From positions 137,261 through 201,260 of IMG/VR virus record IMGVR_UViG_3300044645_002359: a DNA stretch of 64,000 bases; one strand, 5' to 3'. This document shows, piece after piece, positions 18,142 through 49,269 of this stretch. Position 1 is the first letter of the stretch, and each line of letters starts with the position of its first letter. Made by a program: the position numbers and the translations under genes. The notes below the pieces were generated by a model. The model was not told the origin of the DNA. It saw only the letters and a program-made list of their open reading frames with translations, and searched no databases.

Positions 18142-18778
18142 ATGCAAGGTTCATTCTCTGAAGACTCCCTTAAAGTTTTCAACAAGCTTGCTTCAGCAAC
18201 TCAGGAGTTAAATTACAGCGAATCTGGAACAGATTCGTATGACTTCACCCGTTGTGTAAGGCCGAATGGCACTGCCTATGGTACCAAGGGTAAATGTAGA
18301 AAAGGTTCGGAGGAAGAAAGACAAACTTCAGAACTGCAAAAAAAATTCCCCCGAAGTAGAGGCATTGGCTAAAAAACTCATAAAGTTTCAAAAGAAAGAA
18401 AATTTCTTTAAAAGGCTGCAGGACCTTAGACCCGGTGTTTTGAGTGAACATTTTATGACTGCAAAAAATTTAGATTTAGTAATGTATTTTCTTGAAAAAG
18501 AGAAAGCTGCTCTAGAAGCTGAGAAAACAAGGATAAGGAAAGGCGAGATTGAAACTCCAAAACCAAAAGGTACTAAATCCTCTGAAGCAGAAATTGTAGC
18601 CAAAAAGTTAAATACAAGGTTGAAACGAGAATCTAGTTATACAGATTTCTTAGCAAAAGGCCGTGGATCTCTTGATAAAGAGCACGGTGACGAAGTAGCC
18701 CTATATTGGCTTACGAAGTTTAAGGAGGAAAGAGAAGTCCTGGAAGCCAGGAAAGCAAAATCAGAGGCTGAAAAATAA
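18142..18778 (+). CDS. putative internal head protein split by a +1 frameshift at an A8 run
   Basis: ORFs 18142-18372 and 18266-18778 join at CAAAAAAAAT (A8 at 18338-18345); GSFSEDSL N-terminus and YDFTRCVRPNGTAYGTKGKCRKG module. Confidence 0.55.
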
Positions 18779-18894
18779 GAATACTTACTTGGACTTTACG
18801 CGAGTTTGATGAGAAAATTGGGGTCCAATAACAAAAGACTACTCATAGTAACTTTCTCAGTACTAGGCATTCAGAGCCAATCAGCAAATCACCA

Positions 18895-18919
18895 GGGGCT
18901 TCGGCCCCCCTTTTTTTTT
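18895..18919 (+). terminator. rho-independent terminator
   Basis: GGGGC-TTCG-GCCCC, CC, T9. Confidence 0.85.
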
Positions 18920-18924
18920 CTCTC

Positions 18925-18935
18925 AGGGTAAAATA
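18925..18935 (+). promoter_or_regulatory. putative late promoter box
   Basis: AGGGTAAAATA; GGG 36 nt before GTG 18962. Confidence 0.55.
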
Positions 18936-18961
18936 CTACATAACGTGTCTTATGTTTAAAA

Positions 18962-20587
18962 GTGAGTAGTAAATTCCTGTGGCAAAGTTTCTCCTCAAGA
19001 CTTGAAAAGGCAGGTGAGGAAGCCCTAAGAGCTCTCCAGGAAGAAGCAAGAATAGAAAAGCAAACTAAAAGTGCTTCTTCCCCTGAGGGAGACCACACAA
19101 GTCTAGAGATACAAAGGGCGAAGGAAAAAGCTTCTCAGTCTTCAGGGAAAGTTAAAAAATGTTCCACAGGCAAACCTTGTTCTGCGACGTGTATTCACAA
19201 AAATGATGATTGTATATCGACTTTGCCTGCTCCCCTTGGAATTGCCTTAACAAGGCTTTCTAAAGTCCTCTCCGAGCAAGTGGGCGAAAATAGAATTTCA
19301 GAAGAACAGGCAGAAGAGGTTGTATCAAAGATAAAAAGTACAGAAGATTCTCAACTAAAGGCGTTTGACCTCTTTAAGAAACTAGTTGATTCTGGTAAAG
19401 CGTCCGAGACAGAAATGGACTCGGTCGCCAAGCTCCTTATTAGCACCACTTTGACCCCTGGCCAAGACAGAAATGCCCCTCGTGTAATGAGCTTCGACGA
19501 TATCGAGGCGGTCTTGAAGCCAGGGAAATTAGAACAGCTAGAACAAGCTTATCAAAATTCTTTCAGCTCGAAAGGGAAATTCGACCCCTCTCAGAAAGGG
19601 GGAATGGGGGATCTAATAAGTTCGAAGTACCTGGTAAATAAGGTCTCAGATGAGGTTGCAACCGCTGCTTACTATATGCTCCCCTCAAAAGTGCGGTCTG
19701 CCATAGACAAGGCGGGTGCTGTTAAAGGAGAGTCTGTAATGTTCGCCGGCAATGATAAAGACGGTAACCCTACTTTTTCTGACAAACCTTCACGAGAGAG
19801 AGGAATTTTCTTGGTTAAACGCTGGATGGAACAAGGGGAACTGGACCCTTACACAGGAAAACCCATTGACATAAGAAATGCAGAGCCGGAGCACATGGTT
19901 GCATTCGCCCATGCACTCGCAAAGGGTGGTGGTGGTGACCAACCTCGCAACCTGCTTTGGTCGGCATCTCAACCAAACAACCAAAAAGCTGGGTCAGACG
20001 ATAATTTCATGGAGTGGAAAAAACGTCTTCAAGAGTTTAAGAAAATGGGTAGAGAGGCTTACGAACGTGAAGTATATAACCCCGCTGCAAACAAAGCCGA
20101 AGAAGCCAGAGGTAAGAAGGGTTCTGCCTCCGCAGATATAGCCAAAGCTTTATCGTCTCAAACACCAGAAGAAAGAATTGCAGGAGTGAAAGGACTGATA
20201 CAGGCTTACGGGGATAAAGTTCGATATCTGGTAAGAGCGGCTGAGGTAGGCTGGCAACATCAGGATAGAGACTTAGATCACAGAATGGGTGGCAAACCCG
20301 CGTTCATGAACAACGGGGTTCCAAAACTACCCGGAACCAATGTGAAGCCGAGCACAGCGGTTTTGGTAGCATTGGCTGCTGTGGACCCTTCGAAAAAAGA
20401 AGCTCTCAAGGAAGGGTTAGAGGATTTAAGAAAAGCTCGTATTTTGACCGACGGTGAAGCGCAGTCTGTGAGGGGGGATAATAGCGCACGACTTAAACTT
20501 CAGACGCAAAAGAGTTCAGACTACGGCGAAAAATTAGCGGAATTACTGAACAACTTTGTGCCCAATATAAATGTGATATTAGAGTAA
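18962..20587 (+). CDS. HNH nuclease-domain protein with N-terminal 4-Cys module
   Basis: DPYTGKPI...EPEHMVAF...DQPRNLLW...NNQK is an HNH pattern; CSTGKPCSATCIHKNDDC module. Confidence 0.65.
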   Translation: MSSKFLWQSFSSRLEKAGEEALRALQEEARIEKQTKSASSPEGDHTSLEIQRAKEKASQSSGKVKKCSTGKPCSATCIHKNDDCISTLPAPLGIALTRLSKVLSEQVGENRISEEQAEEVVSKIKSTEDSQLKAFDLFKKLVDSGKASETEMDSVAKLLISTTLTPGQDRNAPRVMSFDDIEAVLKPGKLEQLEQAYQNSFSSKGKFDPSQKGGMGDLISSKYLVNKVSDEVATAAYYMLPSKVRSAIDKAGAVKGESVMFAGNDKDGNPTFSDKPSRERGIFLVKRWMEQGELDPYTGKPIDIRNAEPEHMVAFAHALAKGGGGDQPRNLLWSASQPNNQKAGSDDNFMEWKKRLQEFKKMGREAYEREVYNPAANKAEEARGKKGSASADIAKALSSQTPEERIAGVKGLIQAYGDKVRYLVRAAEVGWQHQDRDLDHRMGGKPAFMNNGVPKLPGTNVKPSTAVLVALAAVDPSKKEALKEGLEDLRKARILTDGEAQSVRGDNSARLKLQTQKSSDYGEKLAELLNNFVPNINVILE

Positions 20588-20591
20588 AACC

Positions 20592-20927
20592 ATGAGGAGA
20601 GACAACCGCTTCCCCCGTCCCGACCGCTTCACCTTGGAGCAAGGTCTACCACCCGGCACACTGAGCCACCCTCAAGCCTATGGGGTGTGGTCGATTTTCT
20701 TGCAGTGCGACGATCCTCACGACGTTGCACACAAGTTCCGTTCCTACCGTGACAGCAACTTTTGTTCAATACCCCGTGAGCAACTCCGGGCAATGAGAGA
20801 CACCTTAATTCTTGGTATGAGGGAGTCAAATAAATCCTCGGCAAAACCGCTTAAGGAAAAGCAAAAAGGTCGGCACTATGCCGACTATGAGAATGAATGG
20901 GCGGAAAAGCCCCGCACTGGTGCCTAA
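20592..20927 (+). CDS. hypothetical protein
   Basis: 111 aa, tight spacing in operon. Confidence 0.55.
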   Translation: MRRDNRFPRPDRFTLEQGLPPGTLSHPQAYGVWSIFLQCDDPHDVAHKFRSYRDSNFCSIPREQLRAMRDTLILGMRESNKSSAKPLKEKQKGRHYADYENEWAEKPRTGA

Positions 20928-20929
20928 TT

Positions 20930-21295
20930 ATGACAAGTACGAAAGATAAAATTGAGGGGCAATACCGCATACCCTGTGGCCCGATGGACATCGCCGCCGA
21001 TGCAATTTGCCGCCGCTCATTGCGCGACCGTTTCGACAAGTTGCTCGATAGGCTGACTCTCGAAGTTAACCCTCACCTTCCCACCCCCGGAAAACTACCA
21101 AAAGACCTCGAAGTTTCTGATGACGGAAAAATCGTTGCGAAAAAAGAAGAGTCAGAGGAGGATCGCAGGAGAAAGCTCATTGACGAAGGAAAGTTTCGCG
21201 CAGAGGTTCACGCGGAAATCAAAAAGTACCGTGAGGACCTCCAAGGAAATGGGAAGATGCTACAGGATATCTCTGGTAAGTATGAGTCGATCTGA
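20930..21295 (+). CDS. hypothetical protein
   Basis: Start placed at ATG 20930, just after the previous stop; charged helical C-half. Confidence 0.55.
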   Translation: MTSTKDKIEGQYRIPCGPMDIAADAICRRSLRDRFDKLLDRLTLEVNPHLPTPGKLPKDLEVSDDGKIVAKKEESEEDRRRKLIDEGKFRAEVHAEIKKYREDLQGNGKMLQDISGKYESI

Positions 21296-21304
21296 GTCTT
21301 TCTA

Positions 21305-21315
21305 AGGGTAAAGTT
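21305..21315 (+). promoter_or_regulatory. putative late promoter box
   Basis: AGGGTAAAGTT; GGG 31 nt before ATG 21337. Confidence 0.6.
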
Positions 21316-21336
21316 ACTCAGTCTACAAACTATACA

Positions 21337-21924
21337 ATGTCCAACAGAATCAACGGTGACTTTGACTCTGACTCGATTGAAGCCTTCAGAGCAGCGTACG
21401 CAGCACAAATCCTAGAACCGGAAGACCAAGAGACAGACCAATACACTGGTCTACCCACAAACTTGGTCCTAAATACTTCCCCTTGGCTACAACACACAGG
21501 ACTGTGGAAAGCGAACGACGGCACGAACAAGGACTTCCAACCGAACCAAGTTCTGGTACCCGGCTTAGAAAATTCTGAGGAAGAAGGCGAGTACGACGAA
21601 CTTGACGATCTCTCTGAAGAAGAACTCGAAGAACTTATCGACCAGCTTCTAGCCGACGAAGGCGACGACGACGACGACGAGGAGGAAGACCTGACCTATT
21701 ATGAAGAAGATGGGGATGAGGACGAGCTTTCCGATGAAGAAGTTGAAAGGTTGATTGAGGAGCTTTTGAGTGAAGATGATGAAGAAATTTTCTTGTCAGA
21801 TGAAAATGAATACGAGGGAGAAGAAATAGAAGAACAGGAAATTACTGACGAAGAGATAGATGCCCTGATTGCAGAGATTGAAGCTGAATCCGAAGAGCTT
21901 AATTACGATCCTGAAGAAGATTGA
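21337..21924 (+). CDS. highly acidic protein, putative internal head/scaffold-like
   Basis: GDFDSDSIEAF N-motif; D/E-rich C-half with three EE..LI..L helices. Confidence 0.6.
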   Translation: MSNRINGDFDSDSIEAFRAAYAAQILEPEDQETDQYTGLPTNLVLNTSPWLQHTGLWKANDGTNKDFQPNQVLVPGLENSEEEGEYDELDDLSEEELEELIDQLLADEGDDDDDEEEDLTYYEEDGDEDELSDEEVERLIEELLSEDDEEIFLSDENEYEGEEIEEQEITDEEIDALIAEIEAESEELNYDPEED

Positions 21925-21931
21925 GGTAACA

Positions 21932-22243: not shown

Positions 22244-22261
22244 GATCACTGTAGTGTCTTT

Positions 22262-23236
22262 ATGTACGGAGCTAATTTAGATTTTTCTTCTGTGTCTTTG
22301 CCAGGGGTCGGGGGTTCTCTCAATGCAGCTACCGCCATATCCTCCGACAAACTTCAGGAAATGAATCGCACTGGCAAAAAATGGCGCACCGATAAAGACG
22401 GTAACATGTCTTTCCATAACGAAGCCATTTTGGACGCCAATAAAGCAAGTCGCGAACGAAGGGAAAACTTGGTAAATCGTGACCGAGACGCCCATGCAGA
22501 CGGTCAAGCGGCGATGAAAGAAATTTTCGGCCGAAAGAAAGCCCGGATGGAAGCCTTTCGAGAAATAAAAAGAAACGAATACAACTTTGCCGACGACACG
22601 GAACTAATGTCAATGCCACAACCTTTCGGTGAGGGTTGTTCTACAAGTTGCAAAAGCCCTGGAAAGTGTTCTTGCTCTTCCTGTAAAGCAAAAGCGAAAG
22701 CTGACTCAGAATTTCGTGAATGGACCACAGAAAAGCGCAAGAAACTTCAAACCGGTGAGGCGAAAGGGGAATTCGCCGGCCCGGGAATGTCGTTCCCGAT
22801 CGCAAGTCCAGAGGACGTTTCAGCCGCTTGGTCCTCTGTAGGACGGGCAGCGAACCCCCGTAAAATCATGGCAGAAATCATTCGCATTGCTAAGAAGTAT
22901 GGCTGGGAATCTGGCCTACCTCAGACGGTTAAAGATCGCATGGAAGAGGGTGAGTCCGGTCTACCGTCCCCTGACTTTCGTGAATGGCCTTCAACAAAGA
23001 GGGAAGCTATGAAAAAAGGCGACATTGTCGGACAATTCGCTGGCCCAGGAATGTCCTTTCCCATCGCAAGTCCACAAGATGTTTCGGCAGCTTGGTCTTC
23101 CGTTGGCCGAGCTTCAAATCCTCGCGAAACAATGGCTAAAATTATTGCAATCGCTAAGAAAAACGGCTGGGAGTCTGGACTCCCTCAGACAGTTAAAGAC
23201 CGCCTGAACGCAGGTCAGTCAGGATTACCGAGGTAA
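22262..23236 (+). CDS. putative internal head protein with tandem duplicated domain (DUF6582-like)
   Basis: Two ~77 aa copies FREW...FAGPGMSFPIASP.DVSAAWSSVGRA.NPR...GWESGLPQTVKDR; Cys-rich linker. Confidence 0.6.
   Translation: MYGANLDFSSVSLPGVGGSLNAATAISSDKLQEMNRTGKKWRTDKDGNMSFHNEAILDANKASRERRENLVNRDRDAHADGQAAMKEIFGRKKARMEAFREIKRNEYNFADDTELMSMPQPFGEGCSTSCKSPGKCSCSSCKAKAKADSEFREWTTEKRKKLQTGEAKGEFAGPGMSFPIASPEDVSAAWSSVGRAANPRKIMAEIIRIAKKYGWESGLPQTVKDRMEEGESGLPSPDFREWPSTKREAMKKGDIVGQFAGPGMSFPIASPQDVSAAWSSVGRASNPRETMAKIIAIAKKNGWESGLPQTVKDRLNAGQSGLPR
22712..23206 (+). repeat. intragenic tandem domain duplication, period 264 bp
   Basis: TTTCGTGAATGG at 22712 and 22976; near-identical translation. 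Confidence 0.85.
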
Positions 23237-23240
23237 GAAA

Positions 23241-23612
23241 ATGGGTTTAGTTGAAATTCCTCTAATCATTGCCGGTTGGTTTCTCACAGCAGGAATAGCA
23301 GGAGTAGGCGGAACTTTTGCCATTCAGGGTCGGAACAATAAGAGATTAGACACACTAAGGAGTAACTCTGATAAGAAAATTGAAAGACTTATCGAGGAAA
23401 ATGACAAGAGAATTAACACTTTGATTGCTGCCAATACCCTCCAAAATGAGAACGTATTAAATCATATTAAGAACGTAGAAAAGGCTCTTAATGACATGAG
23501 AGCCGAATTACCGGAAAAGTACACTCTCAAGTCCGACCACTTAAGATTGGTAGACAAAGTAGAAGAGTTGTCGATACAGTTCTACAGACATAGAGAGAAA
23601 GAAGGTGAGTGA
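23241..23612 (+). CDS. membrane-anchored coiled-coil protein
   Basis: N-terminal hydrophobic LVEIPLIIAGWFLTAGIAGVGG, then a heptad-rich segment. Confidence 0.55.
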   Translation: MGLVEIPLIIAGWFLTAGIAGVGGTFAIQGRNNKRLDTLRSNSDKKIERLIEENDKRINTLIAANTLQNENVLNHIKNVEKALNDMRAELPEKYTLKSDHLRLVDKVEELSIQFYRHREKEGE

Positions 23613-24117
23613 GAGCTACGACTGGCACCGGCTGGAAGGTTTGGGTTTTGACCTGAACTACATTGAAAAGGCACTTCCTGCCTCATACAAAAAAGGTCTA
23701 ACTGCACGAGAGCAAGGTGTCGCTAAGCGTGAAGCGAAAGATACTATGGAGAAGGCCAGCAGCAAGAAAACCTCGGCGAAAGAATTGTATAAAGACTGGG
23801 AGTCGGATAAGAGTTTCCGGAATAGGGAAAAAGAGATACCGAAGTCCCCAGCCACAGAAGCATTTGAGCGCGACTTTGCTGAGTCTTCCCCTTCCGACAC
23901 AGCCCTTAAGAACAAGTCAAAAAAGTCCGGCATCCCTATGCCTATACTGAGACAAGTGTTTAAGAGAGGAATGGCAGCTTGGAGGTCTGGTCACCGTCCT
24001 GGTGTTGCACCGCAGCAATGGGCTCAGGCAAGAGTGTCAAGTTTCATCACGGGAGTGGGAGGAGCACGGAAGGCTGATGCCGACCTTTGGAAAAAAGCTA
24101 AGGGTAAAAAACATTAG
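23605..24117 (+). CDS. DUF5824-like domain protein (putative internal head protein)
   Basis: ALKNKSKKSGIP..ILRQVFKRGMAAWRSGHRPG..PQQWAQARVSSF. Confidence 0.65.
   Translation: MSESYDWHRLEGLGFDLNYIEKALPASYKKGLTAREQGVAKREAKDTMEKASSKKTSAKELYKDWESDKSFRNREKEIPKSPATEAFERDFAESSPSDTALKNKSKKSGIPMPILRQVFKRGMAAWRSGHRPGVAPQQWAQARVSSFITGVGGARKADADLWKKAKGKKH
24101..24111 (+). promoter_or_regulatory. putative late promoter box inside the 3' end of the upstream gene
   Basis: AGGGTAAAAAA; GGG 32 nt before ATG 24134; encodes KGKK. Confidence 0.45.
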
Positions 24118-24133: not shown

Positions 24134-24502
24134 ATGAGTAACTTGGGATCTTTTTCTCCGGAAGCTTACAGAGCTTACAAATATGGGGTTGAAAACCCGA
24201 GTAATTTCATGGGAATTGCTCCTGCATTCGAGGCAGAACCAGGGAGAAACCCTGATTCTTTTTCCATGGGCGAAGATGACGAGACTGACGAAGACGATTA
24301 CGATCCAGATTACGGGAACGAGGACTTTGAGCCGAACGGGGGCATGGCTATGACCCAACTTCGCTCTATGCAAGATAACATCGAGACTATTCTTGAAATG
24401 ATCGGTCCCTACTCAAACTTAGACCCCTGGATGGCTGCAAAGTTGGCCGAGGCTGAGCATGGTATGACAGCGATCGCCGACGCTTTACAATACAGAGATT
24501 GA
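24134..24502 (+). CDS. putative internal head protein
   Basis: Start moved to ATG 24134 (MSNLGSFSPEAYRAY); C-domain MAMTQL...LDPWMAAKL resembles small domains of cyanophage head proteins. Confidence 0.55.
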   Translation: MSNLGSFSPEAYRAYKYGVENPSNFMGIAPAFEAEPGRNPDSFSMGEDDETDEDDYDPDYGNEDFEPNGGMAMTQLRSMQDNIETILEMIGPYSNLDPWMAAKLAEAEHGMTAIADALQYRD

Positions 24503-24507
24503 TCAAA

Positions 24508-24867
24508 ATGTGGGGATCTTTCTTACAATCTGCTTATGATTCTTTCCTGGAAGCGGCTATAGAAAAGTACGTTGAGAAAGTTGACAAAAATTCACTAGAT
24601 TGCAATGACCCCCACGCCACTCCGAGTCACCCTACGAAATCTCACATAGTTAAAGCGTGCTATCCTGGAGCCCCGAAAGGTGGCAAGCTGATTCGATTCG
24701 GTCAACAAGGTGTGAAAGGGTCGCCAAAGAAAGAAGGGGAATCGGAGGCTTATAAAGCCAGACGAGAGGCTTTCAAGGCAAGACATGCTGCTAATATTGC
24801 GAAGGGTAAGTCTTCAGCTGCCTACTGGAGTAATCTGGAAGAATGGGCGGAAGACATTAAGTGGTAG
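24508..24867 (+). CDS. DUF6321-like protein (putative internal head protein)
   Basis: MWGSFLQSAY start; HPTKSHIVKAC...IRFGQQGV...RREAFKARHA.NIAKGK.SAAYW. Confidence 0.65.
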   Translation: MWGSFLQSAYDSFLEAAIEKYVEKVDKNSLDCNDPHATPSHPTKSHIVKACYPGAPKGGKLIRFGQQGVKGSPKKEGESEAYKARREAFKARHAANIAKGKSSAAYWSNLEEWAEDIKW

Positions 24868-24899: not shown

Positions 24900-25598
24900 A
24901 TGAAACACAACCACAGAATACTGCCCGGCCACATGGGAGGCGAGTACGTAGAAGGCAATGTTATACCTGTACAAGTAACTCAGTGTGACACTAACACTGC
25001 CAACCATGTAATGTGGCACTTTGCCAACTGGTGCCTTTATGGTAAAGAAGAAGATCGAGCAGCCTATAAAGGTTTATCAGGTTGTTATAGTAAAGAAAAA
25101 ATTATCGAGGAGAGGTTGAGACTAGCTGGTCAAATGCATGTCGATTCCGGCCACATTCAAGAAATAGGCAGGATTAACGGTAAGAGAGCCATGTCTCCGG
25201 GTGGATGGTTATACATGAACAGAATAGAATATGGGCGTTTAGGCTACAAATCAGGGATAGGAAAGTCGGAAAACAGGTTAACAGGGGAACAACTATCTGA
25301 GTTGGCTAAAAAGACTTGGAGAGAAGGGAAAGGTTTGGCAGCTTTAACTCCTGAGCAAAGAAGCGAAATAGGAAAAAGAGCTGGCAAAATTAGTGGACAA
25401 GTGAACAGAGAAAATAAAACAGGGGTTTGCGGAATTCCTCCAGAAGAACACTCCAAAAGAATGTCCGAAACGAACCGTCAAAAATGGCAATGTCCCGTGT
25501 GTGGTTTAATTGGTAATGCCAAGCAAATAAACGCGCATATGGCAGCTGAACATAATCTCGATAAAAAAGCCAAAATTAAGTGTAACTCTAACCACTAG
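24900..25598 (+). mobile_element. free-standing HNH-type homing endonuclease gene
   Basis: HNHRILPGHMGG...GNVI...NHVMWH...EDRAAYKGLSG N-domain, basic helical repeats, C-terminal WQCPVCG...HMAAEH zinc finger. Confidence 0.65.
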
Positions 25599-25631: not shown

Positions 25632-26255
25632 ATGCAAGGAAATTTCGGTATCCCAAATATAGACCACCTGGTAGAAGGAGTTCACTACCACATTGTAGAT
25701 TGGGACTTTGCAGACCCTGCTCCTGCAGCCCCGACACCTACCCCTCCTCACAATCCGGGTGAATCGTGCCCACCAAATCAAAAAATGGTCTTCGGGGTAT
25801 GCCGCCGCGTGAATGCTAGCGGAGAACAACAAGTAGGAGACGACACTGACCAGGAAAGATCCCTAAAAGACCAAGCTAAGAAAGAAGGCTCGGCTTTTGA
25901 GAATAACAAGGCAATGAGTGCCGGTGGTAAGAAGTACGGTTGGGCTATGAAAGGTGGAAAACCGGTAATGGTGGCTTGGGGATCTGTAGCAGGTGAGAAA
26001 AAAGTTGGGCTCAAGAAGCCTGCTTCTGCGGCTCCACCTACCGCGCTCACCGGTTCCCCCGCTCCACGCGCTGGAGCATCCCCTGCACCCGCTAGAGCTG
26101 GTTCCCCAGCTCCAACTACAGCTCCAACAGCCCCAATATCAGCTACTGATAGAGCTGCTTATAACGCAGGAGGGGGCAATGCCGCAGCGCAAAGAGGCAC
26201 GGGGCGAACTACTGAGCAAGTTATAGCTCAAGGTAAGAAAATTTGGATAGACTAG
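25632..26255 (+). CDS. putative internal head protein, Ala/Pro-rich
   Basis: MQGNF start, WDFAD junction, CPPNQKMVFGVC and KKYGWAMKGGKPVMVAWG modules. Confidence 0.55.
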   Translation: MQGNFGIPNIDHLVEGVHYHIVDWDFADPAPAAPTPTPPHNPGESCPPNQKMVFGVCRRVNASGEQQVGDDTDQERSLKDQAKKEGSAFENNKAMSAGGKKYGWAMKGGKPVMVAWGSVAGEKKVGLKKPASAAPPTALTGSPAPRAGASPAPARAGSPAPTTAPTAPISATDRAAYNAGGGNAAAQRGTGRTTEQVIAQGKKIWID

Positions 26256-26330: not shown

Positions 26331-26852
26331 ATGTATAACCCAAGACCCTTAGACTTAGATACATTCTCAGAACAAGAGTTGCAAATCGAAGGGTACACTC
26401 ATATGCCCACGGATTATTACAGGAACACCGTCATGGAGCCTGAAACCGTCTCCACATTAAGACCGAGTTTCGGAGAGTATGAAGCCATGGGAGAGAGGCA
26501 CGAGGAAATCTCTTCTAAGATTGACTTACTCAATCAAGCAATGAAACTTTCCCGTCAGAGGGGGGCTTTTCAAGAGTTGCAGAATCAAATGGCTGCCGTC
26601 AAGAAACTTGTAAAAGAGCGTGAAGAAATTGATGCAAAAATGGCCACTGTTGACCTTGCCCGAAAGAAAACAGATGACCACAACATTGCTGCCGGTATGG
26701 AAACTTCTTACACAGAGCAACTGGATTCGGTAAACTCTCGCATCAACCGTTTACAAAAGCTTCTTCAGGACTTCAGTGAGTCCATGGGAGAAGGTGAGTT
26801 TGACTTTACTCGTAACGGTCGTAAAGGCAAAGCCTGTGAGGAGACACAATGA
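26331..26852 (+). CDS. coiled-coil putative internal head protein
   Basis: 173 aa; DTFSEQEL, DFSES and FDFTR motifs. Confidence 0.55.
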   Translation: MYNPRPLDLDTFSEQELQIEGYTHMPTDYYRNTVMEPETVSTLRPSFGEYEAMGERHEEISSKIDLLNQAMKLSRQRGAFQELQNQMAAVKKLVKEREEIDAKMATVDLARKKTDDHNIAAGMETSYTEQLDSVNSRINRLQKLLQDFSESMGEGEFDFTRNGRKGKACEETQ

Positions 26853-28129
26853 GGCGCTGCTCGAAAGGAAAAAGCTGCGGAGGAACTTGCATCAACCGCA
26901 ACGTTAAATGCAGAGCCACTTTGTCTCCGAAAGTATCAAAGCAGGTTGAGGAAGCGGGCGACATCTTCCTCCGTTTGGTTAACGAGGATAAAAAACCGAG
27001 TTTGATTGTACAAAGGCTGATTGACGCCTTAGGGTTGGGCCCACTAACTCAAAGAGAAGTTGGCAATGACTTTCCCGTCTTAAAGAGGGAGGCAGAACGC
27101 CAACTCGCTGAGTTGCGCAGCCAACCCTCTATGACAGATGAGGAGATTGATCGGGCCAAACGACTTGAAATGGCTCTTATGGATGCTTGGGAAAAGCATA
27201 CTAAGGCCGACCGCATGGTACTCTACGATCGACAGGACGCTCGAGAGTTTGACCATGATTTCATTCCTACCGACAAATTCGGCAAAGATTATGACTGGTC
27301 TCAGTCTTACGAATCTGGTGCCAAAGGTTTGGGCTCAGGAAGCTACGGAAACGTTATGCTCTCTAAACCACCACCGGCTCTTGTAGTGAAGAGAGGAGAA
27401 GTGAGTGAAAGTGAGGTTAAAATTCTAGAAAAGTTAAACGGTAAAGACATTTCTCCGAAGTTCGTTTCAGCGGAGGTCAACAAATACACCGTTATGGCGC
27501 GAGAAGGGGATATAGAATTCTACGAAGGAAGAATTGCAATGACACGGGTTCCGGGTAAAGCCGTAGAAGATTTTGATGACAATGATCCCGCATACGGGAC
27601 GAAGGTCGGAAGTACAACTCTTGGAGACGCTTATTTTCTTCTTCGTAGGAGACTTCACGAAAGCGGAGTTGCCCATAATGACTCTCACATAGAAAATGTC
27701 ATTGTAGATAATAAGGGGAAAGCACGCTTCATTGATTTCGGGCTTTCTCAGGACGACCCTAGAGCAGCTCTATCAGAGGCCATTGGCATACTTGCAGATC
27801 GAAAATTGCTTCCTCAAGGTGTTGTACTAAAACGAGTTTTAGATGATTTTTCCGGGGACCGAAAAGGAAGGAAATATAAAGCTTACACCCAACCCATAAA
27901 AGACCTTCTTAAGGGTGGCACCAATACCAACCTCGAAAAGGTTGTTCGTAATCGCACTAAAGTATACGCAGAGCTTGCAAAGCTAGGTTTATCCAAGGAT
28001 GAGATAGCTGAGCTTGTGGTTCATGAGTTAAACCAGCCCATCAGCTCCTACAACAAAGGTGCCTGGTCCAAAGTAAGCAAAAAAGATGCAATGCGGATTA
28101 TCCCCCTACTCTACGAAGGCGTAAATTAA
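26849..28129 (+). CDS. protein kinase-like enzyme with N-terminal 4-Cys module
   Basis: GLGSGSYG Gly-loop, VVK, E in SEVKIL, catalytic HNDSHIEN, IDFG; GAGGAG RBS. Confidence 0.8.
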   Translation: MRRCSKGKSCGGTCINRNVKCRATLSPKVSKQVEEAGDIFLRLVNEDKKPSLIVQRLIDALGLGPLTQREVGNDFPVLKREAERQLAELRSQPSMTDEEIDRAKRLEMALMDAWEKHTKADRMVLYDRQDAREFDHDFIPTDKFGKDYDWSQSYESGAKGLGSGSYGNVMLSKPPPALVVKRGEVSESEVKILEKLNGKDISPKFVSAEVNKYTVMAREGDIEFYEGRIAMTRVPGKAVEDFDDNDPAYGTKVGSTTLGDAYFLLRRRLHESGVAHNDSHIENVIVDNKGKARFIDFGLSQDDPRAALSEAIGILADRKLLPQGVVLKRVLDDFSGDRKGRKYKAYTQPIKDLLKGGTNTNLEKVVRNRTKVYAELAKLGLSKDEIAELVVHELNQPISSYNKGAWSKVSKKDAMRIIPLLYEGVN

Positions 28130-44836: not shown

Positions 44837-44857
44837 TTCAGTGGGTTGAATCTAATA

Positions 44858-44868
44858 AACTTTACCCG
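44858..44868 (-). promoter_or_regulatory. putative late promoter box on the minus strand
   Basis: Reverse complement CGGGTAAAGTT; GGG 31 nt before ATG 44836. Confidence 0.6.
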
Positions 44869-44911
44869 ACTACAAGGAAGCTAGGATAAGGTCAACGGTA
44901 ATTGACTCAAT

Positions 44912-45512: not shown

Positions 45513-45525
45513 TCTTCATTAAACA

Positions 45526-46146
45526 GTGAAACCAACAGAGTTAGAGTTTAAAGAACTCAAGCAAAAGTCCTCAGAGTGGGCTGAACAACGACTGTCTGAC
45601 CCTAAAACAGTAGTTATTGACTGTGAAACTACTGGGATCTTAAGAAACGATCCAAATACCGAAATCGTTCAACTTACAGTTACGAACGTTGCAGCCAGGC
45701 CTCTATTTTCAATGTTGATTAAGCCCGCTCAGCCAATGAGAGACGAGCTGGTAAATATCCATGGCATTTCCAACGAGATGGTGATGGATAGTCCCATTTT
45801 CCCTCAGGTAGCGAAGCTAATCTCGTTCATTCTCGAAGGTAAGCACGTTGTCGCATATAACGCTGACTTCGACGTTGCCCTCTTGGTTCATCTATATAAA
45901 AAGTACGACATACCCGCTCCGAAGTTCTCCGGGGCCAGTTGCTGCATGGACAGGTATTCCGAGTGGAAGGGTGAATGGAACGAAGGTAAGGAAGGAATCC
46001 GTTGGCAAAAACTTCCAAACTTGTCAGGTATGCCTGCTCACGACGCACTGTCTGACTGCGTTTCCACTATTCGCGTAATGGAATTAATGGCCAGGGGAAT
46101 TGACTTGGCTACCCTTGATTCTGAAGAAATTTCTCTAAACTTTTGA
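45526..46146 (+). CDS. DEDDh 3'-5' exonuclease (DNA polymerase III epsilon-like)
   Basis: VIDCETTG, IHGI, AYNADFD, HDALSDC. Confidence 0.9.
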   Translation: MKPTELEFKELKQKSSEWAEQRLSDPKTVVIDCETTGILRNDPNTEIVQLTVTNVAARPLFSMLIKPAQPMRDELVNIHGISNEMVMDSPIFPQVAKLISFILEGKHVVAYNADFDVALLVHLYKKYDIPAPKFSGASCCMDRYSEWKGEWNEGKEGIRWQKLPNLSGMPAHDALSDCVSTIRVMELMARGIDLATLDSEEISLNF

Positions 46147-46151
46147 TAACC

Positions 46152-46451
46152 ATGTTCGGTAAAATTACGATCACCTACGAGCCCCCCAACAATGACCCAG
46201 ATGAGAGTAGGGTCTCTATGCAATTTTCTTCAGAGGCAGACCTGAACGAAATTGTAAGGAACTTCGAGCGTTTCCTTCGAGTAATGGAGTACCCTCTAGA
46301 TCAAGGTGATTCTCTCGAGGTTGTTTACGCAAAAGACTGCCCTGACACACCTGCGCACTTCACGGCTTTCCCTAGTCTCGGAAAAAACTGTTACCTCACT
46401 TTGACCGATGGTAGTCTGTATAACCTAACATCAAGAGATTCGGAGAGCTGA
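46152..46451 (+). CDS. hypothetical protein
   Basis: ~99 aa; FS.EADL.EIV..FERFLR.M.Y resembles common small phage proteins. Confidence 0.5.
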   Translation: MFGKITITYEPPNNDPDESRVSMQFSSEADLNEIVRNFERFLRVMEYPLDQGDSLEVVYAKDCPDTPAHFTAFPSLGKNCYLTLTDGSLYNLTSRDSES

Positions 46452-46452
46452 G

Positions 46453-47295
46453 GTGGAAAACAATAATCCCTGGTTCATTGAAGGATCAAGTAAATCTCGT
46501 CTAGTTACCGTTACACCTCACGCAGAAGAGCATATTGCTTATATCGCCAGAGTAACAAGCAAGAACCAAAGCAACCCTAAAATCTCAGGTTTGCTAAAGT
46601 ACTGTGCAAAAGACGGACATTGGAGCGTTTTCGAGCAAGCTACCATGTCAGTAGAAGTTGTCACACCTTTGGCAATCTCAATTCAGGCACTGAGGCACCG
46701 GTCCTTTTGCTTTCAGCAATTTTCAGGAAGGTATGAAGATCAGGGTTTCATGAGAAACTATACAGAAGATCTTTCCACCTACCAAGATCTGTTCTACATG
46801 CCCGAAGAAGCAAGGCTCCAAGACACCAAGAACCGTCAGAATAGCTTCGTGGCAGATGACGCAAGTCTCACAGACTTTATGTGGTCTGAATTCGAGTTCG
46901 CCTACAAAGCTTCTATCACTGCCTACAATAATCTCCTTGGGCGCGGTATCGCTAAGGAACTAGCACGTTTTGTTCTTCCCGAGGGTGTGTATACTCGTCT
47001 CTACATTACCGGAAATGTGAGATCGTTCATTCACTACATTAACGTGAGAGACGATCATGGGGTGGCTCAGTGGGAACACGTAGAACTTGCAAGGGCTGTG
47101 CGTTCCGTGTTTGCAACCCAATTCCCCACTATTTACAGCTCTTTGTTCGACCCGCAAACGGGTAGTCTTTTATACAAAGACAAAGAGCACGAAGAGCAGA
47201 TTGCCCAACTTCAAGGAGAAATTTCGGTCCTCCAAGACGAGATCACAGGCTTGAAAACTACTATTACCCTTCTTCAAAATCGACTGTCTAACTGA
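46453..47295 (+). CDS. thyX: flavin-dependent thymidylate synthase
   Basis: GHWSVFEQ, RHRSFCFQQFSGRY, KELARFVLP, RSFIHYINVR. Confidence 0.93.
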   Translation: MENNNPWFIEGSSKSRLVTVTPHAEEHIAYIARVTSKNQSNPKISGLLKYCAKDGHWSVFEQATMSVEVVTPLAISIQALRHRSFCFQQFSGRYEDQGFMRNYTEDLSTYQDLFYMPEEARLQDTKNRQNSFVADDASLTDFMWSEFEFAYKASITAYNNLLGRGIAKELARFVLPEGVYTRLYITGNVRSFIHYINVRDDHGVAQWEHVELARAVRSVFATQFPTIYSSLFDPQTGSLLYKDKEHEEQIAQLQGEISVLQDEITGLKTTITLLQNRLSN

Positions 47296-47528
47296 TGAAC
47301 AACCAAATTGCAAAAGGATTCTGGAAAATCGTTGAGGATTCTCCCCCTGTAGATAAAGAGTATTTGGTTGCGTTCCCTGATAGAGCAGGGAGCTACAATC
47401 TCATAGACTGCGACATTTGGCAGTTTAAATCTGGAGAATGGCGTAGCTTGTCAGACTCTAGGTTTCTAGAGGAAGAAGTTGGCCTACCGGCTTACTACAT
47501 TGACATTCCTATGCCGAAAGCTGAGTAG
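47295..47528 (+). CDS. hypothetical protein (DUF551-like)
   Basis: W.....SPP....YLV...W......Y.....P.PK pattern. Confidence 0.5.
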   Translation: MNNQIAKGFWKIVEDSPPVDKEYLVAFPDRAGSYNLIDCDIWQFKSGEWRSLSDSRFLEEEVGLPAYYIDIPMPKAE

Positions 47529-47538
47529 TTTACGAAAG

Positions 47539-47569
47539 ACGGTAACTCCAATAATAAAAGGGTTACCGT
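47539..47569. promoter_or_regulatory. inverted repeat (operator or hairpin)
   Basis: ACGGTAAC-N15-GTTACCGT directly before ATG 47580. Confidence 0.45.
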
Positions 47570-47579
47570 TACAACCCTC

Positions 47580-48563
47580 ATGAGTGAAAGTCAACCCGCC
47601 CGCCCCAAACTCGAGTCTTACTTCAAACTTGACAGTGATCCTGCTCCTTTGGTGGTAGTTGACTTTCACGTATACTTACACGATGTGAAAAAGTGGTTCG
47701 AAGAAAAAGTTGAGGGGTCCGTCAGTAAAGAAGTAGAAGACAAATTGATAAAAGGATGTTGGGCCTTGAAGATAAATCGAGGGCCGGATATGCTGCCTAG
47801 GCACGATTACCGTATTGTTGTTGTTGCAGATAGCAGATTTTCGGATACAGGTAATTACTGGCGCGACACTTTCATGAAACGATCTGCAGACGTGCAGTCG
47901 GCTTGGTTAGCTTTTGCGGAAAAAGAGGGGAAAGATCTATCGGAAATCCCAACCCATTACAAGGGCACTCGTGGAGAGAAAACCGAGACGTTTTGGCGCA
48001 TATTCAACATAGGTTGGGACTACGTCAACAAATACTATCCGGTTTTTTCTCAAGAAGGGTTTGAAGCGGACGATGTAGCAGGGGCTATATATCGCCTGTC
48101 TCGCAATAGCCCCCCAGGTTCTGTGGTACGAGAGAGGCAGATTTTGCTTTCAACTTTAGACCGAGATTGGTCTCAATTGGTTGATGAAGACATGAATGTT
48201 TATTTCGCAAACACCCGTGTTCCCTTCCCTAACGAAAAGATTCAGGAAAGATTAGTAGGCAATATAGGGGTTATTGAACATACGAAACATAGGATGGGTT
48301 ACGACCTTGACCACCCGAAGAATTTGGCCGACTGGAAAGTTAAACATGGTGATTCATCTGACAATTTGCCACCAGGCTCTCCAAAATGTCTTTTCGACCT
48401 ATGCGAACCCCATACAGAATACACTATAGAAAGAACTGCTTCCTGGTACCCTCAGCTTGAGGAGTGTTTGAATGACCCCTCTGCCAATATAAAAACTTTT
48501 CACTTTGATCAGGCTTACAAAGAATTCGCTAAAATTAGTATTGACATACCGGTGAGGTTGTAA
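47580..48563 (+). CDS. 5'-3' exonuclease/flap endonuclease (T4 RNase H/T5 FEN-like)
   Basis: VVVDF, YKG.R, GFEADDVAG, STLDRDWSQL, GDSSDNLP. Confidence 0.85.
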   Translation: MSESQPARPKLESYFKLDSDPAPLVVVDFHVYLHDVKKWFEEKVEGSVSKEVEDKLIKGCWALKINRGPDMLPRHDYRIVVVADSRFSDTGNYWRDTFMKRSADVQSAWLAFAEKEGKDLSEIPTHYKGTRGEKTETFWRIFNIGWDYVNKYYPVFSQEGFEADDVAGAIYRLSRNSPPGSVVRERQILLSTLDRDWSQLVDEDMNVYFANTRVPFPNEKIQERLVGNIGVIEHTKHRMGYDLDHPKNLADWKVKHGDSSDNLPPGSPKCLFDLCEPHTEYTIERTASWYPQLEECLNDPSANIKTFHFDQAYKEFAKISIDIPVRL

Positions 48564-48565
48564 AG

Positions 48566-48576
48566 CGGGTAAAACT
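48566..48576 (+). promoter_or_regulatory. putative late promoter box
   Basis: CGGGTAAAACT; GGG 31 nt before ATG 48598. Confidence 0.6.
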
Positions 48577-48597
48577 AGGTAGAATGAATATGTACGG

Positions 48598-49269
48598 ATG
48601 CAATCCGACTCTGCCTACTTTGCTCAATGTAATCCGATGGCTCACCTTCTTATTGAAGTGTGTGGCGGAAATGCTGCGGCTATTCCTCAGCATTACCTTG
48701 ATAATTTCCACCATGACTTTGCTGACGGGGATATCTCTCTGGTTCCAGCACTCTCTAAGCTTGATGACGAGGTAGACTTGAGCCCAGAAGAGCTTGATGA
48801 GACCCTGGAAGCATTGCAAAAAGTCAACCCGAACCACTGGCCCGCCGTTGACGTTATAGAAAACATAGACCCACACAGGCTTCTAAATTTATCTGGGGAA
48901 TTTGAAAATCTCTCTGAAAACTTTGTTGAAGACAACCTCGGCACTGCGGAAAAAGTTGAAAGAGTTTTGAAGGGAGTGATTGAAAGTGTTTTCGGAGGTA
49001 CTGTAAACAGTATTCGAGATCCCAAGGGCGAATATCCGTCAAGTTCAAACGACTTTTTACAGGAGGATGACGGTACCTTTTCAGGAACCTTTCAACATGA
49101 AGGCCATCACTTTCGCTTTGAGATAGCTCCCACCGAGCAAGGGTGGATCTGCACTTATCGCATGGAAGAATCCTCTCTCGACAAGATTCCTCAGATTGTG
49201 AAAGATGCGAAGAGGGACAATAAAGAATCTACGAAAGTTAAAAGTGTTCGCAGTCAGGGGTGGAAGTAA
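48598..49269 (+). CDS. acidic hypothetical late protein
   Basis: 223 aa after the late box; contains an HDFAD junction like the 18-28 kb proteins. Confidence 0.55.
   Translation: MQSDSAYFAQCNPMAHLLIEVCGGNAAAIPQHYLDNFHHDFADGDISLVPALSKLDDEVDLSPEELDETLEALQKVNPNHWPAVDVIENIDPHRLLNLSGEFENLSENFVEDNLGTAEKVERVLKGVIESVFGGTVNSIRDPKGEYPSSSNDFLQEDDGTFSGTFQHEGHHFRFEIAPTEQGWICTYRMEESSLDKIPQIVKDAKRDNKESTKVKSVRSQGWK

What the first reader, a model, noticed from the sequence alone, without database searches (positions are those of the whole stretch)
18211..48729. Recurring [DN]-[FY]-[AS]-[ED] junction just before cargo domains: predicted maturation cleavage code
NYSE (18211), NFAD (22583), DFAE (23872, just before the DUF5824-like domain), DFAD (25704), DFSE (26769) and DFAD (48715, a late gene far from the cluster) all occur at leader/domain boundaries. 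Variants EFRE/DFRE open each repeat in 22262, DFEP (24323) precedes a domain, and [YF]DFTR occurs twice (18238, 26799). This suggests a prohead protease cutting after an aromatic residue, analogous to T4 gp21 cutting after Glu, releasing small domains inside the capsid. The protease gene is not in this window.
Basis: inference. Interest (0 to 1): 0.7.

Follow-up and report, generated by a model that had tools for sequence, protein, structure and literature searches.

The report
Predicted phage head-protease cut motif
A short aromatic–small–glutamate motif (F/Y-A/S-E) recurs in the head protease-scaffold protein of this large cyanophage and just upstream of a small two-cysteine tag carried by many of its likely injected enzymes. 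It is probably where the head protease cuts, after the Glu, but no protein data test this yet.

Summary
All the listed sites exist at the stated coordinates. Counted inside the window alone, however, the four-residue class is not beyond what a motif chosen after seeing the data gives by chance.

It becomes convincing once refined to [FY]-[AS]-E and tested on independent data:
- **Protease-scaffold.** The gene lies 4.7 kb upstream of the window, in a Mu-like head module. It has 6 sites where 0.8 are expected. Across 78 homologues there are 465 sites where 69 are expected.
- **Tag family.** At least 927 protein clusters carry the tag YDFTRC.R.DG..YG..G.C.KG. In the best 150 proteins the motif sits about 10 residues upstream of it: 242 sites where 7 are expected, including 23 of 31 internal junctions of two-module proteins. 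Cargo domains include ADP-ribosyltransferases, kinases and a cytidylyltransferase.

DFAE is plausible. The three sites ending in Asp are weak.

The best reading is a cleavage code like that of T4 and phiKZ, cutting after Glu with the aromatic residue at P3, not after the aromatic residue. Cleavage and packaging remain inferred. I rate it a new variant of a known kind.

The parts
18142..18372 (+). 76-aa ORF that consists of little more than the family's N-terminal unit: tag MQGSFSE (FSE at 18154-18162), NYSE (18211-18222), YDFTRC...C.KG two-cysteine module (from 18238). It may be truncated or frameshifted, because it overlaps ORF 18266-18778.
   Evidence: 40-77% identical to the N-termini of four paralogues in the same genome. 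The AF2 model gives a helix at residues 7-21, coil at 22-37 (which holds NYSE) and a small hairpin at 38-51, with mean pLDDT 65.
18962..20587 (+). 541-aa protein with a 65-aa leader followed by a four-cysteine module (C-x5-C-x3-C-x6-C). It is a homologue of a protein annotated 'virion structural protein' in S-CBWM1. It has no [FY][AS]E in its leader.
   Evidence: 43% identity to S-CBWM1 YP_009816532. The leader is missing or different in L004 and L005. Sequences compared.
21337..21924 (+). 195-aa very acidic protein whose N-terminus (…NGDFDSDSIEAF) resembles the family's N-terminal tag. A possible further cargo or internal protein, on weak evidence.
22262..23236 (+). 324-aa protein: tag-like N-terminus, NFAD (22583-22594), a Cys-rich stretch, then two repeats of about 88 aa that begin [ED]FREW. 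The NFAD site ends in Asp, so it is a weak candidate.
   Evidence: Orthologues read NFAD/NFAD/KFAD. The segment is absent from the short S-CBWM1 orthologue. Weak DUF6582 match.
23605..24117 (+). 170-aa DUF5824 protein. DFAE (23872-23883, residues 90-93) is conserved as NFTE and KFAE in orthologues. A plausible site.
   Evidence: Pfam DUF5824 scores 69 bits over residues 68-156, so the site lies inside the Pfam envelope. The shorter phrog_28338 core starts at residue 97, just after the site. Alignment.
24134..24502 (+). Protein of about 122 aa. The true start is probably the Met at 24134, giving N-terminus MSNLGSFSPEAY (tag-like). In the L005 orthologue the N-terminus reads GSFSEDSLRSFSEG. DFEP (24323) is not conserved.
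24499..24867 (+). 122-aa protein with a tag-like N-terminus (MWGSF…). In L005 (G002) its orthologue is fused behind a two-cysteine module.
   Evidence: (group F).
25632..26255 (+). 207-aa protein with a tag-like N-terminus (MQGNFG…). DFAD (25704-25715) is followed by a proline-rich linker. The site ends in Asp and is only partly conserved (NFAD, DFAT), so it is a weak candidate.
26331..26852 (+). 173-aa coiled-coil protein. It has TFSE near the N-terminus (FSE at 26364-26372). Near the C-terminus it has a canonical junction, DFSE (26769-26780), then x7, then FDFTR (26799-26813). The protein then stops 12 codons after FDFTR.
   Evidence: Proteins with the same coiled-coil context before the junction (P0009, P0053, P0088) continue in frame into the two-cysteine module.
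26849..28129 (+). 426-aa protein-kinase-like cargo that begins directly with the four-cysteine module (MRRCSKGKSCGGTCI…).
   Evidence: Weak Pkinase, APH and ABC1 matches. S-CBWM1 kinases start with the same module.
48598..49269 (+). 223-aa protein of unknown function with DFAD (48715-48726). The site ends in Asp, is only partly conserved (EYSD, SFSS), and the protein has no tag or module. Doubtful.

Best explanation
[FY]-[AS]-E is the recognition motif of this phage lineage's prohead protease, with cleavage most likely after the Glu.

**The protease.** It is the N-terminal domain of a Mu gpI-like protease-scaffold fusion. The gene lies at genome 129970-132546, 4.7 kb upstream of the window.

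**Proposed targets.** (1) The protease cuts its own scaffold at several sites. One follows the protease domain and one lies about 65 residues from the C-terminus, analogous to the release and maturation sites of herpesvirus assemblin. (2) It cuts a set of proteins brought into the prohead by a shared N-terminal unit. That unit is a tag M-x-G-x-F-S-E-E-A-L, a second [FY][AS][EQ] element, and a proximal [DNS]-F-[SA]-E-G-[ED]-T-Y. Directly after it comes a small module, D-F-T-R-C-x-R-x-D-G-x-x-Y-G-x-x-G-x-C-x-K-G.

**The cargo.** Behind the unit sit interchangeable domains: ADP-ribosyltransferase, kinase or phosphotransferase, cytidylyltransferase, DUF5824 and coiled coils. By analogy with T4 Alt and the T4 internal proteins, these would be trimmed in the head and ejected into the host.

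**The window cluster.** The genes between phoH and the tail-fibre genes (18.1-28.1 kb) are such cargo genes. NYSE and DFSE are canonical junctions and DFAE is a probable one.

**Shown:** the motif, its register, its conservation, its enrichment, the identity of the head module and the cargo domains.

**Inferred:** that the proteins are packaged, that the motif is cut, and that the cut follows Glu.
For: **Head module**
- The portal is Portal_Mu, PF06074, E 4.8e-70.
- The protease matches phrog_976 'head maturation protease', E 6.5e-57. Many homologues carry PF10123, Mu-like prophage I protein.
- H56, S102, S104 and H123 are invariant, in the His-Ser-His order of assemblin.
- The best Foldseek hits are KSHV protease and T4 gp21, but they are weak.

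**Scaffold**
- 6 [FY][AS]E where 0.79 are expected.
- The sites are conserved in eight homologues including S-CBWM1, with F/Y and A/S exchanges and an unchanged Glu.
- 465 sites where 68.8 are expected in 78 homologues. Permutations of the same residues are 0.16-0.58 of expectation.
- G[TS]Lx[FY][AS]EGE lies 63-71 residues from the C-terminus in 50 of 60 roughly distinct proteins. GLExFx[FY][AS]E follows the protease domain in 28 of 60.

**Cargo family**
- 927 representative clusters match at E <= 1e-3.
- In the best 150, the 32 residues upstream of the module hold 242 [FY][AS][ED] where 7.4 are expected. The rest of the proteins hold 37 where 49.4 are expected.
- 106 of 134 N-terminal modules and 23 of 31 internal modules have the site 5-20 residues upstream.
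- A two-module protein in G002 has an internal GNFSENDEFQDFTRC junction.
- The heptapeptide F[AS]EGE[ST] occurs at the scaffold's C-terminal site in 50 of 60 proteins. It also occurs in 15 of the 150 family proteins, and F[AS]EG in 57.
- The AF2 model puts NYSE in a coil between a helix and the Cys hairpin.
- Cargo domains: ART, PF01129, E 6.6e-13; CTP_transf_like; APH.
- Every related genome or large fragment of 64 kb or more that holds this protease also holds the module: G000 has 5, G002 has 11, G003 has 14, G004 has 6, G006 has 1 and S-CBWM1 has 1.
- A homologue of the window's 541-aa protein is annotated as a virion structural protein in S-CBWM1.

**Precedent**
- SPN3US gp245 cuts after A-x-E. 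Several motif copies occur in the propeptides of its ejection proteins (PMC10052503).
Against: - There are no protein-level data. No tool here shows cleavage or presence in virions.
- I could not verify the basis of the S-CBWM1 'virion structural protein' annotation. The protein concerned carries the four-cysteine module and has no [FY][AS]E in its leader.
- S-CBWM1's only member of the two-cysteine family (gp165) is annotated merely as hypothetical.
- The motif is part of a conserved stretch of about 58 residues, so its conservation could be structural or serve docking rather than cleavage.
- Some family members lack the site.
- The major capsid protein and the portal show no candidate site.
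- The protease model has low confidence (pLDDT 57), and no Foldseek match reaches E 0.001.
- The complex prediction gave no answer.
- Paralogous and orthologous sequences are not independent, so the Poisson P values overstate significance.
Confidence: 0.55

Rival explanations
1. The motif is a docking or capsid-targeting peptide that is not cut. The leaders would mimic the C-terminal F[AS]EGE[ST] element of the scaffold and bind the same site, on the capsid's inner surface, the portal, the MuF-like protein or the scaffold. That would carry cargo into the prohead, as encapsulin cargo-loading peptides or the T4 capsid-targeting sequence do.
For: - The same heptapeptide occurs at the scaffold's C-terminal site and in part of the cargo family.
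- Scaffold C-termini commonly bind the coat protein (my knowledge of P22 and herpesviruses).
- The extreme N-terminal M-x-G-x-F-S-E tag is highly conserved, with G3 in at least 90% of 93 sequences. Removing only seven residues would not seem to require that.
Against: - About six copies spread along the scaffold, including one directly after the protease domain and several in acidic linkers, fit repeated cutting better than docking.
- A strict Glu with free exchange at the neighbouring positions is the pattern of Glu-specific prohead proteases.
- The two functions are not exclusive. The T4 targeting sequence ends in a cleavage site.
Confidence: 0.2
2. The motif is simply a structural part of a conserved N-terminal domain (helix caps plus a Cys hairpin), with a function unrelated to head maturation. 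Examples would be oligomerisation, metal binding or localisation in the host. The proteins need not be packaged.
For: - [DNST]-x-x-E is the classical helix capping box, and the N-terminal FSE sits at the start of the predicted helix 7-21.
- D/N-hydrophobic-A/S-E/D classes are mildly enriched genome-wide, 1.4-fold for [DN][LIMV][AS][ED].
- Family genes are scattered through the genome, not only in the late region.
Against: - The proximal site (NYSE) is predicted in coil, with no helix after it.
- A capping box does not explain the near-invariant aromatic and small residues.
- It does not explain the independent seven-fold enrichment in the protease-scaffold protein.
- It does not explain why the site is retained at the internal junctions of two-module proteins.
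Confidence: 0.17
3. For the individual sites that end in Asp or lie outside the family (NFAD 22583, DFAD 25704, DFAD 48715, DFEP, [ED]FRE), the match is a chance resemblance in acidic proteins.
For: - The post hoc control shows that the window count is not exceptional.
- Asp is rare at the last position in the family: 6 of 134.
- Asp is not enriched in scaffolds beyond what one structural YAD per protein would explain (my estimate).
- The first residue or the Asp drifts in orthologues, and DFEP is not conserved.
Against: F-A-D is kept in the 50-70% identical orthologues of ORFs 22262 and 25632. These proteins also have tag-like N-termini.
Confidence: 0.6

Closest known systems
T4 prohead protease gp21 with the capsid-targeting sequences of the internal proteins IPI-III and Alt
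   Same: - Several unrelated cargo proteins, including an ADP-ribosyltransferase, share a short N-terminal leader.
- A three-residue motif ending in Glu with a hydrophobic P3 recurs in the leaders and many times in the scaffold.
- The protease probably has the assemblin-like fold.
   Different: - The protease is not of the gp21 family. PF03420 was not found in the genome (though the control for that search also found nothing). Homologues carry PF10123.
- The protease is fused to the scaffold.
- P3 is aromatic and P2 is restricted to Ala or Ser.
- The leader is longer, with up to three motif copies, and is followed by a conserved two-cysteine module that T4 lacks.
- Nothing is shown experimentally here.
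phiKZ gp175 and SPN3US gp245 processing of ejection proteins (A/S/G-x-E)
   Same: - A large phage with many head-internal proteins.
- Cleavage after Glu.
- Several motif copies within propeptides (PMC10052503).
   Different: - A different motif, in which the small residue is at P2 rather than P3.
- A different protease family and a Mu-like head module.
- The processing here is only predicted.
Herpesvirus assemblin (pUL26-type protease-scaffold fusion with release and maturation sites)
   Same: - An N-terminal protease with His-Ser-His order of invariant residues, fused to a linker and a scaffold.
- One candidate site directly after the protease domain.
- One candidate site at a fixed short distance (63-71 residues) from the C-terminus.
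   Different: - Assemblin cuts at V/L-x-A|S.
- The structural similarity here is weak (Foldseek E 0.02, TM about 0.3-0.37, on a model with pLDDT 57).
Phage Mu gpI/gpZ protease-scaffold with Mu-type portal and MuF-like protein
   Same: - Portal_Mu reaches the Pfam cut-off.
- Protease homologues carry PF10123.
- A MuF-like C-terminal Cys motif protein is encoded next to the protease (my reading of the sequence).
   Different: - The scaffold has a linker of up to about 450 extra, very acidic residues.
- The virion is a large myovirus with T4-like tail genes.
- I know of no published cleavage motif for the Mu protease to compare with.
Polyvalent proteins of phages and conjugative elements (Iyer et al. 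2017, PMC5512222)
   Same: - Shuffled effector domains (ART, kinase, nucleotidyltransferase) are thought to be delivered with the DNA and processed by a peptidase.
- The same domains occur fused in some genomes and as separate genes in others.
   Different: - These are mostly single-cargo genes, each with its own leader and module, not polypeptides of 2-15 domains.
- No zincin-like peptidase domain was seen among the proteins scanned.
- The two-cysteine module is not in Pfam, and I did not find it in that paper using the search terms I tried.

Membership tests
Prohead-protease-processed, capsid-targeted internal proteins (T4 CTS/IP/Alt type) | A common N-terminal leader on otherwise unrelated proteins | tested here: met
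   The tag M-x-G-x-F-S-E plus the proximal [DNS]F[SA]E occurs on proteins with ART, kinase, cytidylyltransferase or coiled-coil cargo.
Prohead-protease-processed, capsid-targeted internal proteins (T4 CTS/IP/Alt type) | The leader ends in the same short motif that recurs in the scaffold or protease | tested here: met
   [FY][AS]E: 465 where 68.8 are expected in 78 protease-scaffolds, and 242 where 7.4 are expected upstream of the module. F[AS]EGE[ST] occurs in both sets.
Prohead-protease-processed, capsid-targeted internal proteins (T4 CTS/IP/Alt type) | The proteins are present in virions and their mature N-termini follow the motif | not testable with these tools
   The only lead is an annotation of unknown basis, 'virion structural protein', on the S-CBWM1 homologue of ORF 18962.
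T4 gp21 family protease (Peptidase_S77, PF03420) | Match to the family profile | tested here: not met
   No PF03420 match in the genome, but that search's control genomes also gave nothing. The protease found matches phrog_976, and its homologues carry PF10123.
Mu gpI-like protease/scaffold (PF10123) | Match to the family profile | tested here: inconclusive
   hmmscan of the S-CBWM1 protein gave no Pfam hit at E <= 0.01. Many 54-61% identical homologues have a precomputed PF10123 hit. The phrog_976 match is strong.
Mu gpI-like protease/scaffold (PF10123) | Mu-type head gene neighbourhood (Mu portal, MuF-like protein) | tested here: met
   Portal_Mu at 237 bits against a cut-off of 23.9. The gene order is portal, protease-scaffold, then a protein with a MuF-like C-terminal Cys motif.
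Assemblin-fold serine protease | Fold similarity and a His-Ser-His or His-Ser-acid triad | tested here: inconclusive
   The top Foldseek hits are KSHV protease and T4 gp21, but with E 0.02-0.06 on a model of pLDDT 57. H56, S102/S104 and H123 are invariant.
Polyvalent proteins (Iyer et al. 2017) | Two to fifteen effector domains in one polypeptide, with a processing peptidase domain | tested here: not met
   Window genes carry one cargo each. Some relatives have two modules. No peptidase domain was seen in the proteins scanned.
DUF5824 (PF19141), for ORF 23605 | Match above Pfam's gathering score | tested here: met
   69.4 bits against a cut-off of 25, over residues 68-156. DFAE at residues 90-93 lies inside the envelope, not strictly before it.
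Helix capping box ([STDN]-x-x-E) as a purely structural explanation | The motif sits at the N-terminus of a helix | tested here: not met
   For the proximal site (NYSE, residues 24-27) the model shows coil from 22 to 37. The N-terminal FSE does precede helix 7-21 (moderate confidence).

The most novel reading that the evidence does not exclude
A jumbo cyanophage lineage, whose near-complete relative is 277 kb, uses a modular 'tag, module and cut' system. A shared leader with F-[AS]-E sites and a two-cysteine module would load dozens of interchangeable effector enzymes into the capsid (ADP-ribosyltransferases, kinases, nucleotidyltransferases and many unknown domains, in at least 927 sequence clusters). 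A Mu-type protease-scaffold with a previously undescribed aromatic-small-Glu specificity would then trim them for ejection into the host. Internal junctions in two-module proteins would be cut to release separate effectors.
Probability: 0.4. Interest if true: 0.75.

Novelty: new variant of a known kind. Interest (0 to 1): 0.62.

Why it matters
If correct, this gives three things:
- a testable cleavage specificity for a widespread but unstudied protease-scaffold family (Mu gpI-like, in large aquatic myoviruses);
- a simple sequence rule for recognising the packaged, probably injected proteins of these phages directly from metagenomes;
- a large, unannotated N-terminal module family, absent from Pfam and present in only one cultured phage, that tags diverse host-directed enzymes.

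It would extend the T4 and phiKZ idea of capsid-targeted, protease-trimmed ejection proteins to a Mu-like head module in cyanophages.

Tried and rejected
- **DNA search of the cluster against 50,697 phage records:** no match.
- **PF03420 search of the genome:** nothing, but the controls were silent too, so it is uninformative.
- **Pfam on the protease, the MuF-like protein and the 541-aa protein:** nothing.
- **PDB sequence search with the protease profile:** only chance-level hits.
- **Complex prediction of protease domain plus the window's 60-residue leader:** 'no answer', not evidence either way.
- **First shuffle script:** timed out. I replaced it with analytic expectations.
- **Literature:** the original S-CBWM1 paper, which may hold virion mass spectrometry, is not in the searchable library. 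The polyvalent-protein paper has no mention of cysteine motifs under the terms I tried.
- **Context of a distant family member (L035):** no head genes on that 29-kb contig.
- **Rejected ideas:** cleavage after the aromatic residue; DFEP and [ED]FRE as variant sites; YDFTR as a variant site; the host Prp/L27-type F-A|S cleavage known from Firmicute phages, which I considered from memory (wrong lineage and wrong invariant residue).

Full report
**What the window is**

The window is the last 64 kb of a 201,260-bp IMG/VR virus record, estimated 71% complete. Almost all genes are on the + strand. It encodes baseplate, neck, large terminase, PhoH, very long tail-fibre proteins, a tape-measure-like protein and replication genes.

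The closest isolate is Synechococcus phage S-CBWM1 (Aokuangvirus). Its large terminase is 58% identical and the gene order is the same from phoH to the tail fibres. A related IMG/VR record, 98% complete, is 277 kb, so this is a jumbo-class cyanomyovirus lineage.

**Checking the observation**

Using expectations from each protein's own composition:
- [DN][FY][AS][ED] occurs 4 times in the 16 cluster proteins where 0.41 is expected.
- It occurs 13 times where 7.7 are expected in the other 302 ORFs of the genome.

The motif was defined after inspection, so I enumerated 234,256 comparable four-position classes in the same proteins. The best reach P about 6e-6 and at least 15 fall below 1e-4. Shuffled versions of the proteins give a minimum P of about 1e-5. 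Judged on the window alone, the count is therefore not more than chance.

**Conservation**

Three related loci were found (L003 about 90% identical, L004, and L005 in record G002 at about 50-70%), plus S-CBWM1. In alignments the sites persist, but the first residue drifts:

| ORF | Window | L003 | L005/G002 | S-CBWM1 |
|---|---|---|---|---|
| 22262 | NFAD | NFAD | KFAD | segment absent |
| 23605 | DFAE | NFTE | KFAE | no orthologue aligned |
| 25632 | DFAD | NFAD | DFAT | no orthologue aligned |
| 26331 | DFSE | DFSE | EYAE | no orthologue aligned |
| 48598 | DFAD | not covered | EYSD | SFSS |

DFEP is not conserved. The stable core is therefore [FY][AS][ED]. Across all orthologue pairs of three genomes this triplet is the best conserved of 14 control triplets, but only moderately: 36% against 9-28% in S-CBWM1.

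The head module lies just upstream of the window. In order it holds:
- a Mu-type portal (PF06074, E 4.8e-70);
- an 858-aa protease-scaffold fusion at genome 129970-132546;
- a protein with a MuF-like C-terminal Cys motif;
- a small 157-aa protein;
- the major capsid gene.

The N-terminal 240 residues of the fusion match phrog_976 'head maturation protease' (E 6.5e-57). Many of 78 database homologues carry PF10123, Mu-like prophage I protein. H56, S102, S104 and H123 are invariant. A low-confidence AF2 model (pLDDT 57) finds herpesvirus proteases and T4 gp21 as its best, but non-significant, Foldseek hits.

With the motif now fixed in advance, the results are:
- This protein has 6 [FY][AS]E where 0.79 are expected.
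- In an alignment of eight homologues the sites are conserved, with F/Y and A/S exchanges and an unchanged Glu. They are FSFSE right after the protease domain, QQFSEM, GDFAEV, DDYSETDDFC (NDYAE in S-CBWM1, just before the coiled-coil scaffold part) and TLEFAEGE.
- In all 78 homologues there are 465 sites where 68.8 are expected. Permutations of the same residues are depleted, at 0.16-0.58 of expectation.
- The C-terminal site G[TS]Lx[FY][AS]EGE lies 63-71 residues from the end in 50 of 60 roughly distinct proteins.

The layout is protease, a site, an acidic linker with more sites, the scaffold, then a site at a fixed distance from the C-terminus. This resembles the herpesvirus protease-scaffold with its release and maturation sites (my knowledge).

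**What NYSE, DFSE and YDFTR really are**

The 76-aa ORF at 18142 is one of at least five paralogues in this genome. The others start at genome 10424, 27053, 45736 and 52127. G002 has 10 family genes carrying 11 modules, and S-CBWM1 has one, gp165.

They share an N-terminal unit: M-x-G-S-F-S-E-x-S-L, then a proximal [FY][AS]E, then 4-7 residues, then [DE]-F-T-R-C-x-R-x-[DN]-G-x-x-Y-G-x-x-G-x-C-x-K-G (alignment A1). Behind it sit different cargo domains:
- ADP-ribosyltransferase (PF01129, E 6.6e-13; weak PF03496 in a G000 paralogue);
- cytidylyltransferase-like;
- APH/kinase;
- coiled coils.

A profile of the unit finds 927 representative clusters at E <= 1e-3 among 1.84 billion proteins. Among 50,697 phage records, only S-CBWM1 has it.

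In the best 150 proteins:
- The consensus upstream of the first Cys is [DNS]-F-[SA]-E-G-[ED]-T-Y-D-F-T-R-C.
- The 32 residues upstream of the module contain 242 [FY][AS][ED] where 7.4 are expected. The rest of the proteins contain 37 where 49.4 are expected.
- The site is present 5-20 residues upstream in 106 of 134 N-terminal modules and 23 of 31 internal modules of two-module proteins.
- Glu dominates the last position (82 of 134). Asp is rare (6 of 134).

ORF 26331 ends 12 codons after FDFTR, and the next gene (the kinase at 26849) starts with a different, four-cysteine module. Proteins with the same coiled-coil context before the junction (P0009, P0053, P0088) run on in frame into a two-cysteine module. 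This looks like a split or remodelled junction.

Several other cluster proteins have tag-like N-termini without the module: ORFs 21337, 22262, 24134, 24499 and 25632.

The AF2 model of the 18142 ORF (93-sequence alignment, pLDDT 65) shows a helix at residues 7-21, coil at 22-37 containing NYSE, and a small hairpin carrying the two cysteines.

**Interpretation**

Two independent protein sets of the same phages share a three-residue motif with a strict Glu. One set is the scaffold, which must be removed from the head. The other is a family of proteins with a common leader and host-directed enzymatic cargo. This pattern is known from T4 (L/I-x-E in gp22, the internal proteins and Alt; my knowledge). 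It is also known from SPN3US and phiKZ (A-x-E, with several copies in propeptides of ejection proteins; PMC10052503).

The simplest mechanism is cleavage after Glu, with the aromatic residue at P3 and Ala or Ser at P2. I put this at about 0.55. The alternatives are:
- a non-cleaved docking signal, for which the shared F[AS]EGE[ST] heptapeptide argues (0.2);
- a purely structural role within the conserved N-terminal unit (0.17).

Packaging is inferred only from three things: the analogy, the late-region location of the window cluster, and the 'virion structural protein' annotation of the S-CBWM1 homologue of ORF 18962. That protein carries the four-cysteine module, not the motif. The complex prediction gave no answer.

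**Verdict on each listed site**

| Site | Verdict |
|---|---|
| NYSE 18211 | Canonical junction |
| DFSE 26769 | Canonical junction |
| DFAE 23872 | Plausible. It lies inside the Pfam DUF5824 envelope but before the shorter PHROG core |
| NFAD 22583 | Weak; ends in Asp |
| DFAD 25704 | Weak; ends in Asp |
| DFAD 48715 | Weak; ends in Asp, no tag or module |
| DFEP 24323 | Not supported |
| [ED]FRE in ORF 22262 | Not supported |

**Novelty**

Capsid-targeted, protease-trimmed internal proteins are well known. What appears new is the motif, the protease family to which it is attributed, the two-cysteine module, and the size and modularity of the cargo family. I rate it a new variant of a known kind.

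Noticed in passing
window 1-635 and upstream (genome 134879-137892; L008): The major capsid gene is in three pieces (genome 134879-134953, 136136-136324, 137113-137892). Two insertions separate them, each holding an HNH-like endonuclease ORF. A third such ORF lies just before the first piece. The S-CBWM1 gene is uninterrupted. This looks like group I introns or similar mobile insertions in the capsid gene.
   Followed up: partly
window 15470-16867: A second large-terminase-like gene lies directly after the large terminase gene. It is 31% identical over 463 residues, keeps the Walker A-like GKS, and has a weak Terminase_6C match. S-CBWM1 has only one large terminase gene at this place.
   Followed up: partly
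window 24900-25598: A 232-aa ORF resembles the homing endonuclease in the S-CBWM1 psbA intron (33% over 57 residues). It is absent from the same position in L003 and L005, so it is probably a free-standing mobile endonuclease inside the cargo cluster.
   Followed up: partly
window 18068-18961: About 0.9 kb is absent from the 90%-identical relative L003. It holds the 76-aa leader-plus-module ORF, overlapped by a 170-aa Lys/Glu-rich ORF in another frame (18266-18778). This may be a frameshifted or truncated family gene.
   Followed up: partly
window 18962-19200 and 26849-26920; S-CBWM1 genes at 66779, 70374, 117830, 118742 and 132375: A second N-terminal module, K-x-C-x-K-G-K-S-C-G-x-x-C-I-x5-C (four cysteines), heads several kinases and the virion-protein homologue. 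It may be an alternative tag to the two-cysteine module.
   Followed up: partly
genome 133376-133849 (upstream of the window; L008 9877-10347): A small 157-aa protein between the MuF-like gene and the capsid gene has a conserved [FY][AS]E-T at residues 16-19 in all three genomes (YAET, YSET, FAET). It is a candidate 18-residue propeptide.
   Followed up: no
window 26060-26255: ORF 25632 has a C-terminal extension of about 65 residues, rich in Pro, Ala, Thr and Gly, that L003 and L005 lack.
   Followed up: no
L035 (ENA contig carrying family member P0014): A two-module family protein sits among ADP-ribosyl-glycohydrolase, NAMPT/NAPRTase-like and PRPP-synthase-like genes. NAD turnover genes therefore lie next to a family whose cargo includes ADP-ribosyltransferases.
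   Followed up: no
G002 2124-11535 (L023): Seven genes carrying the two-cysteine module (eight modules) lie in one stretch on one strand, forming an 'effector island'. In the window's genome the family is scattered.
   Followed up: partly
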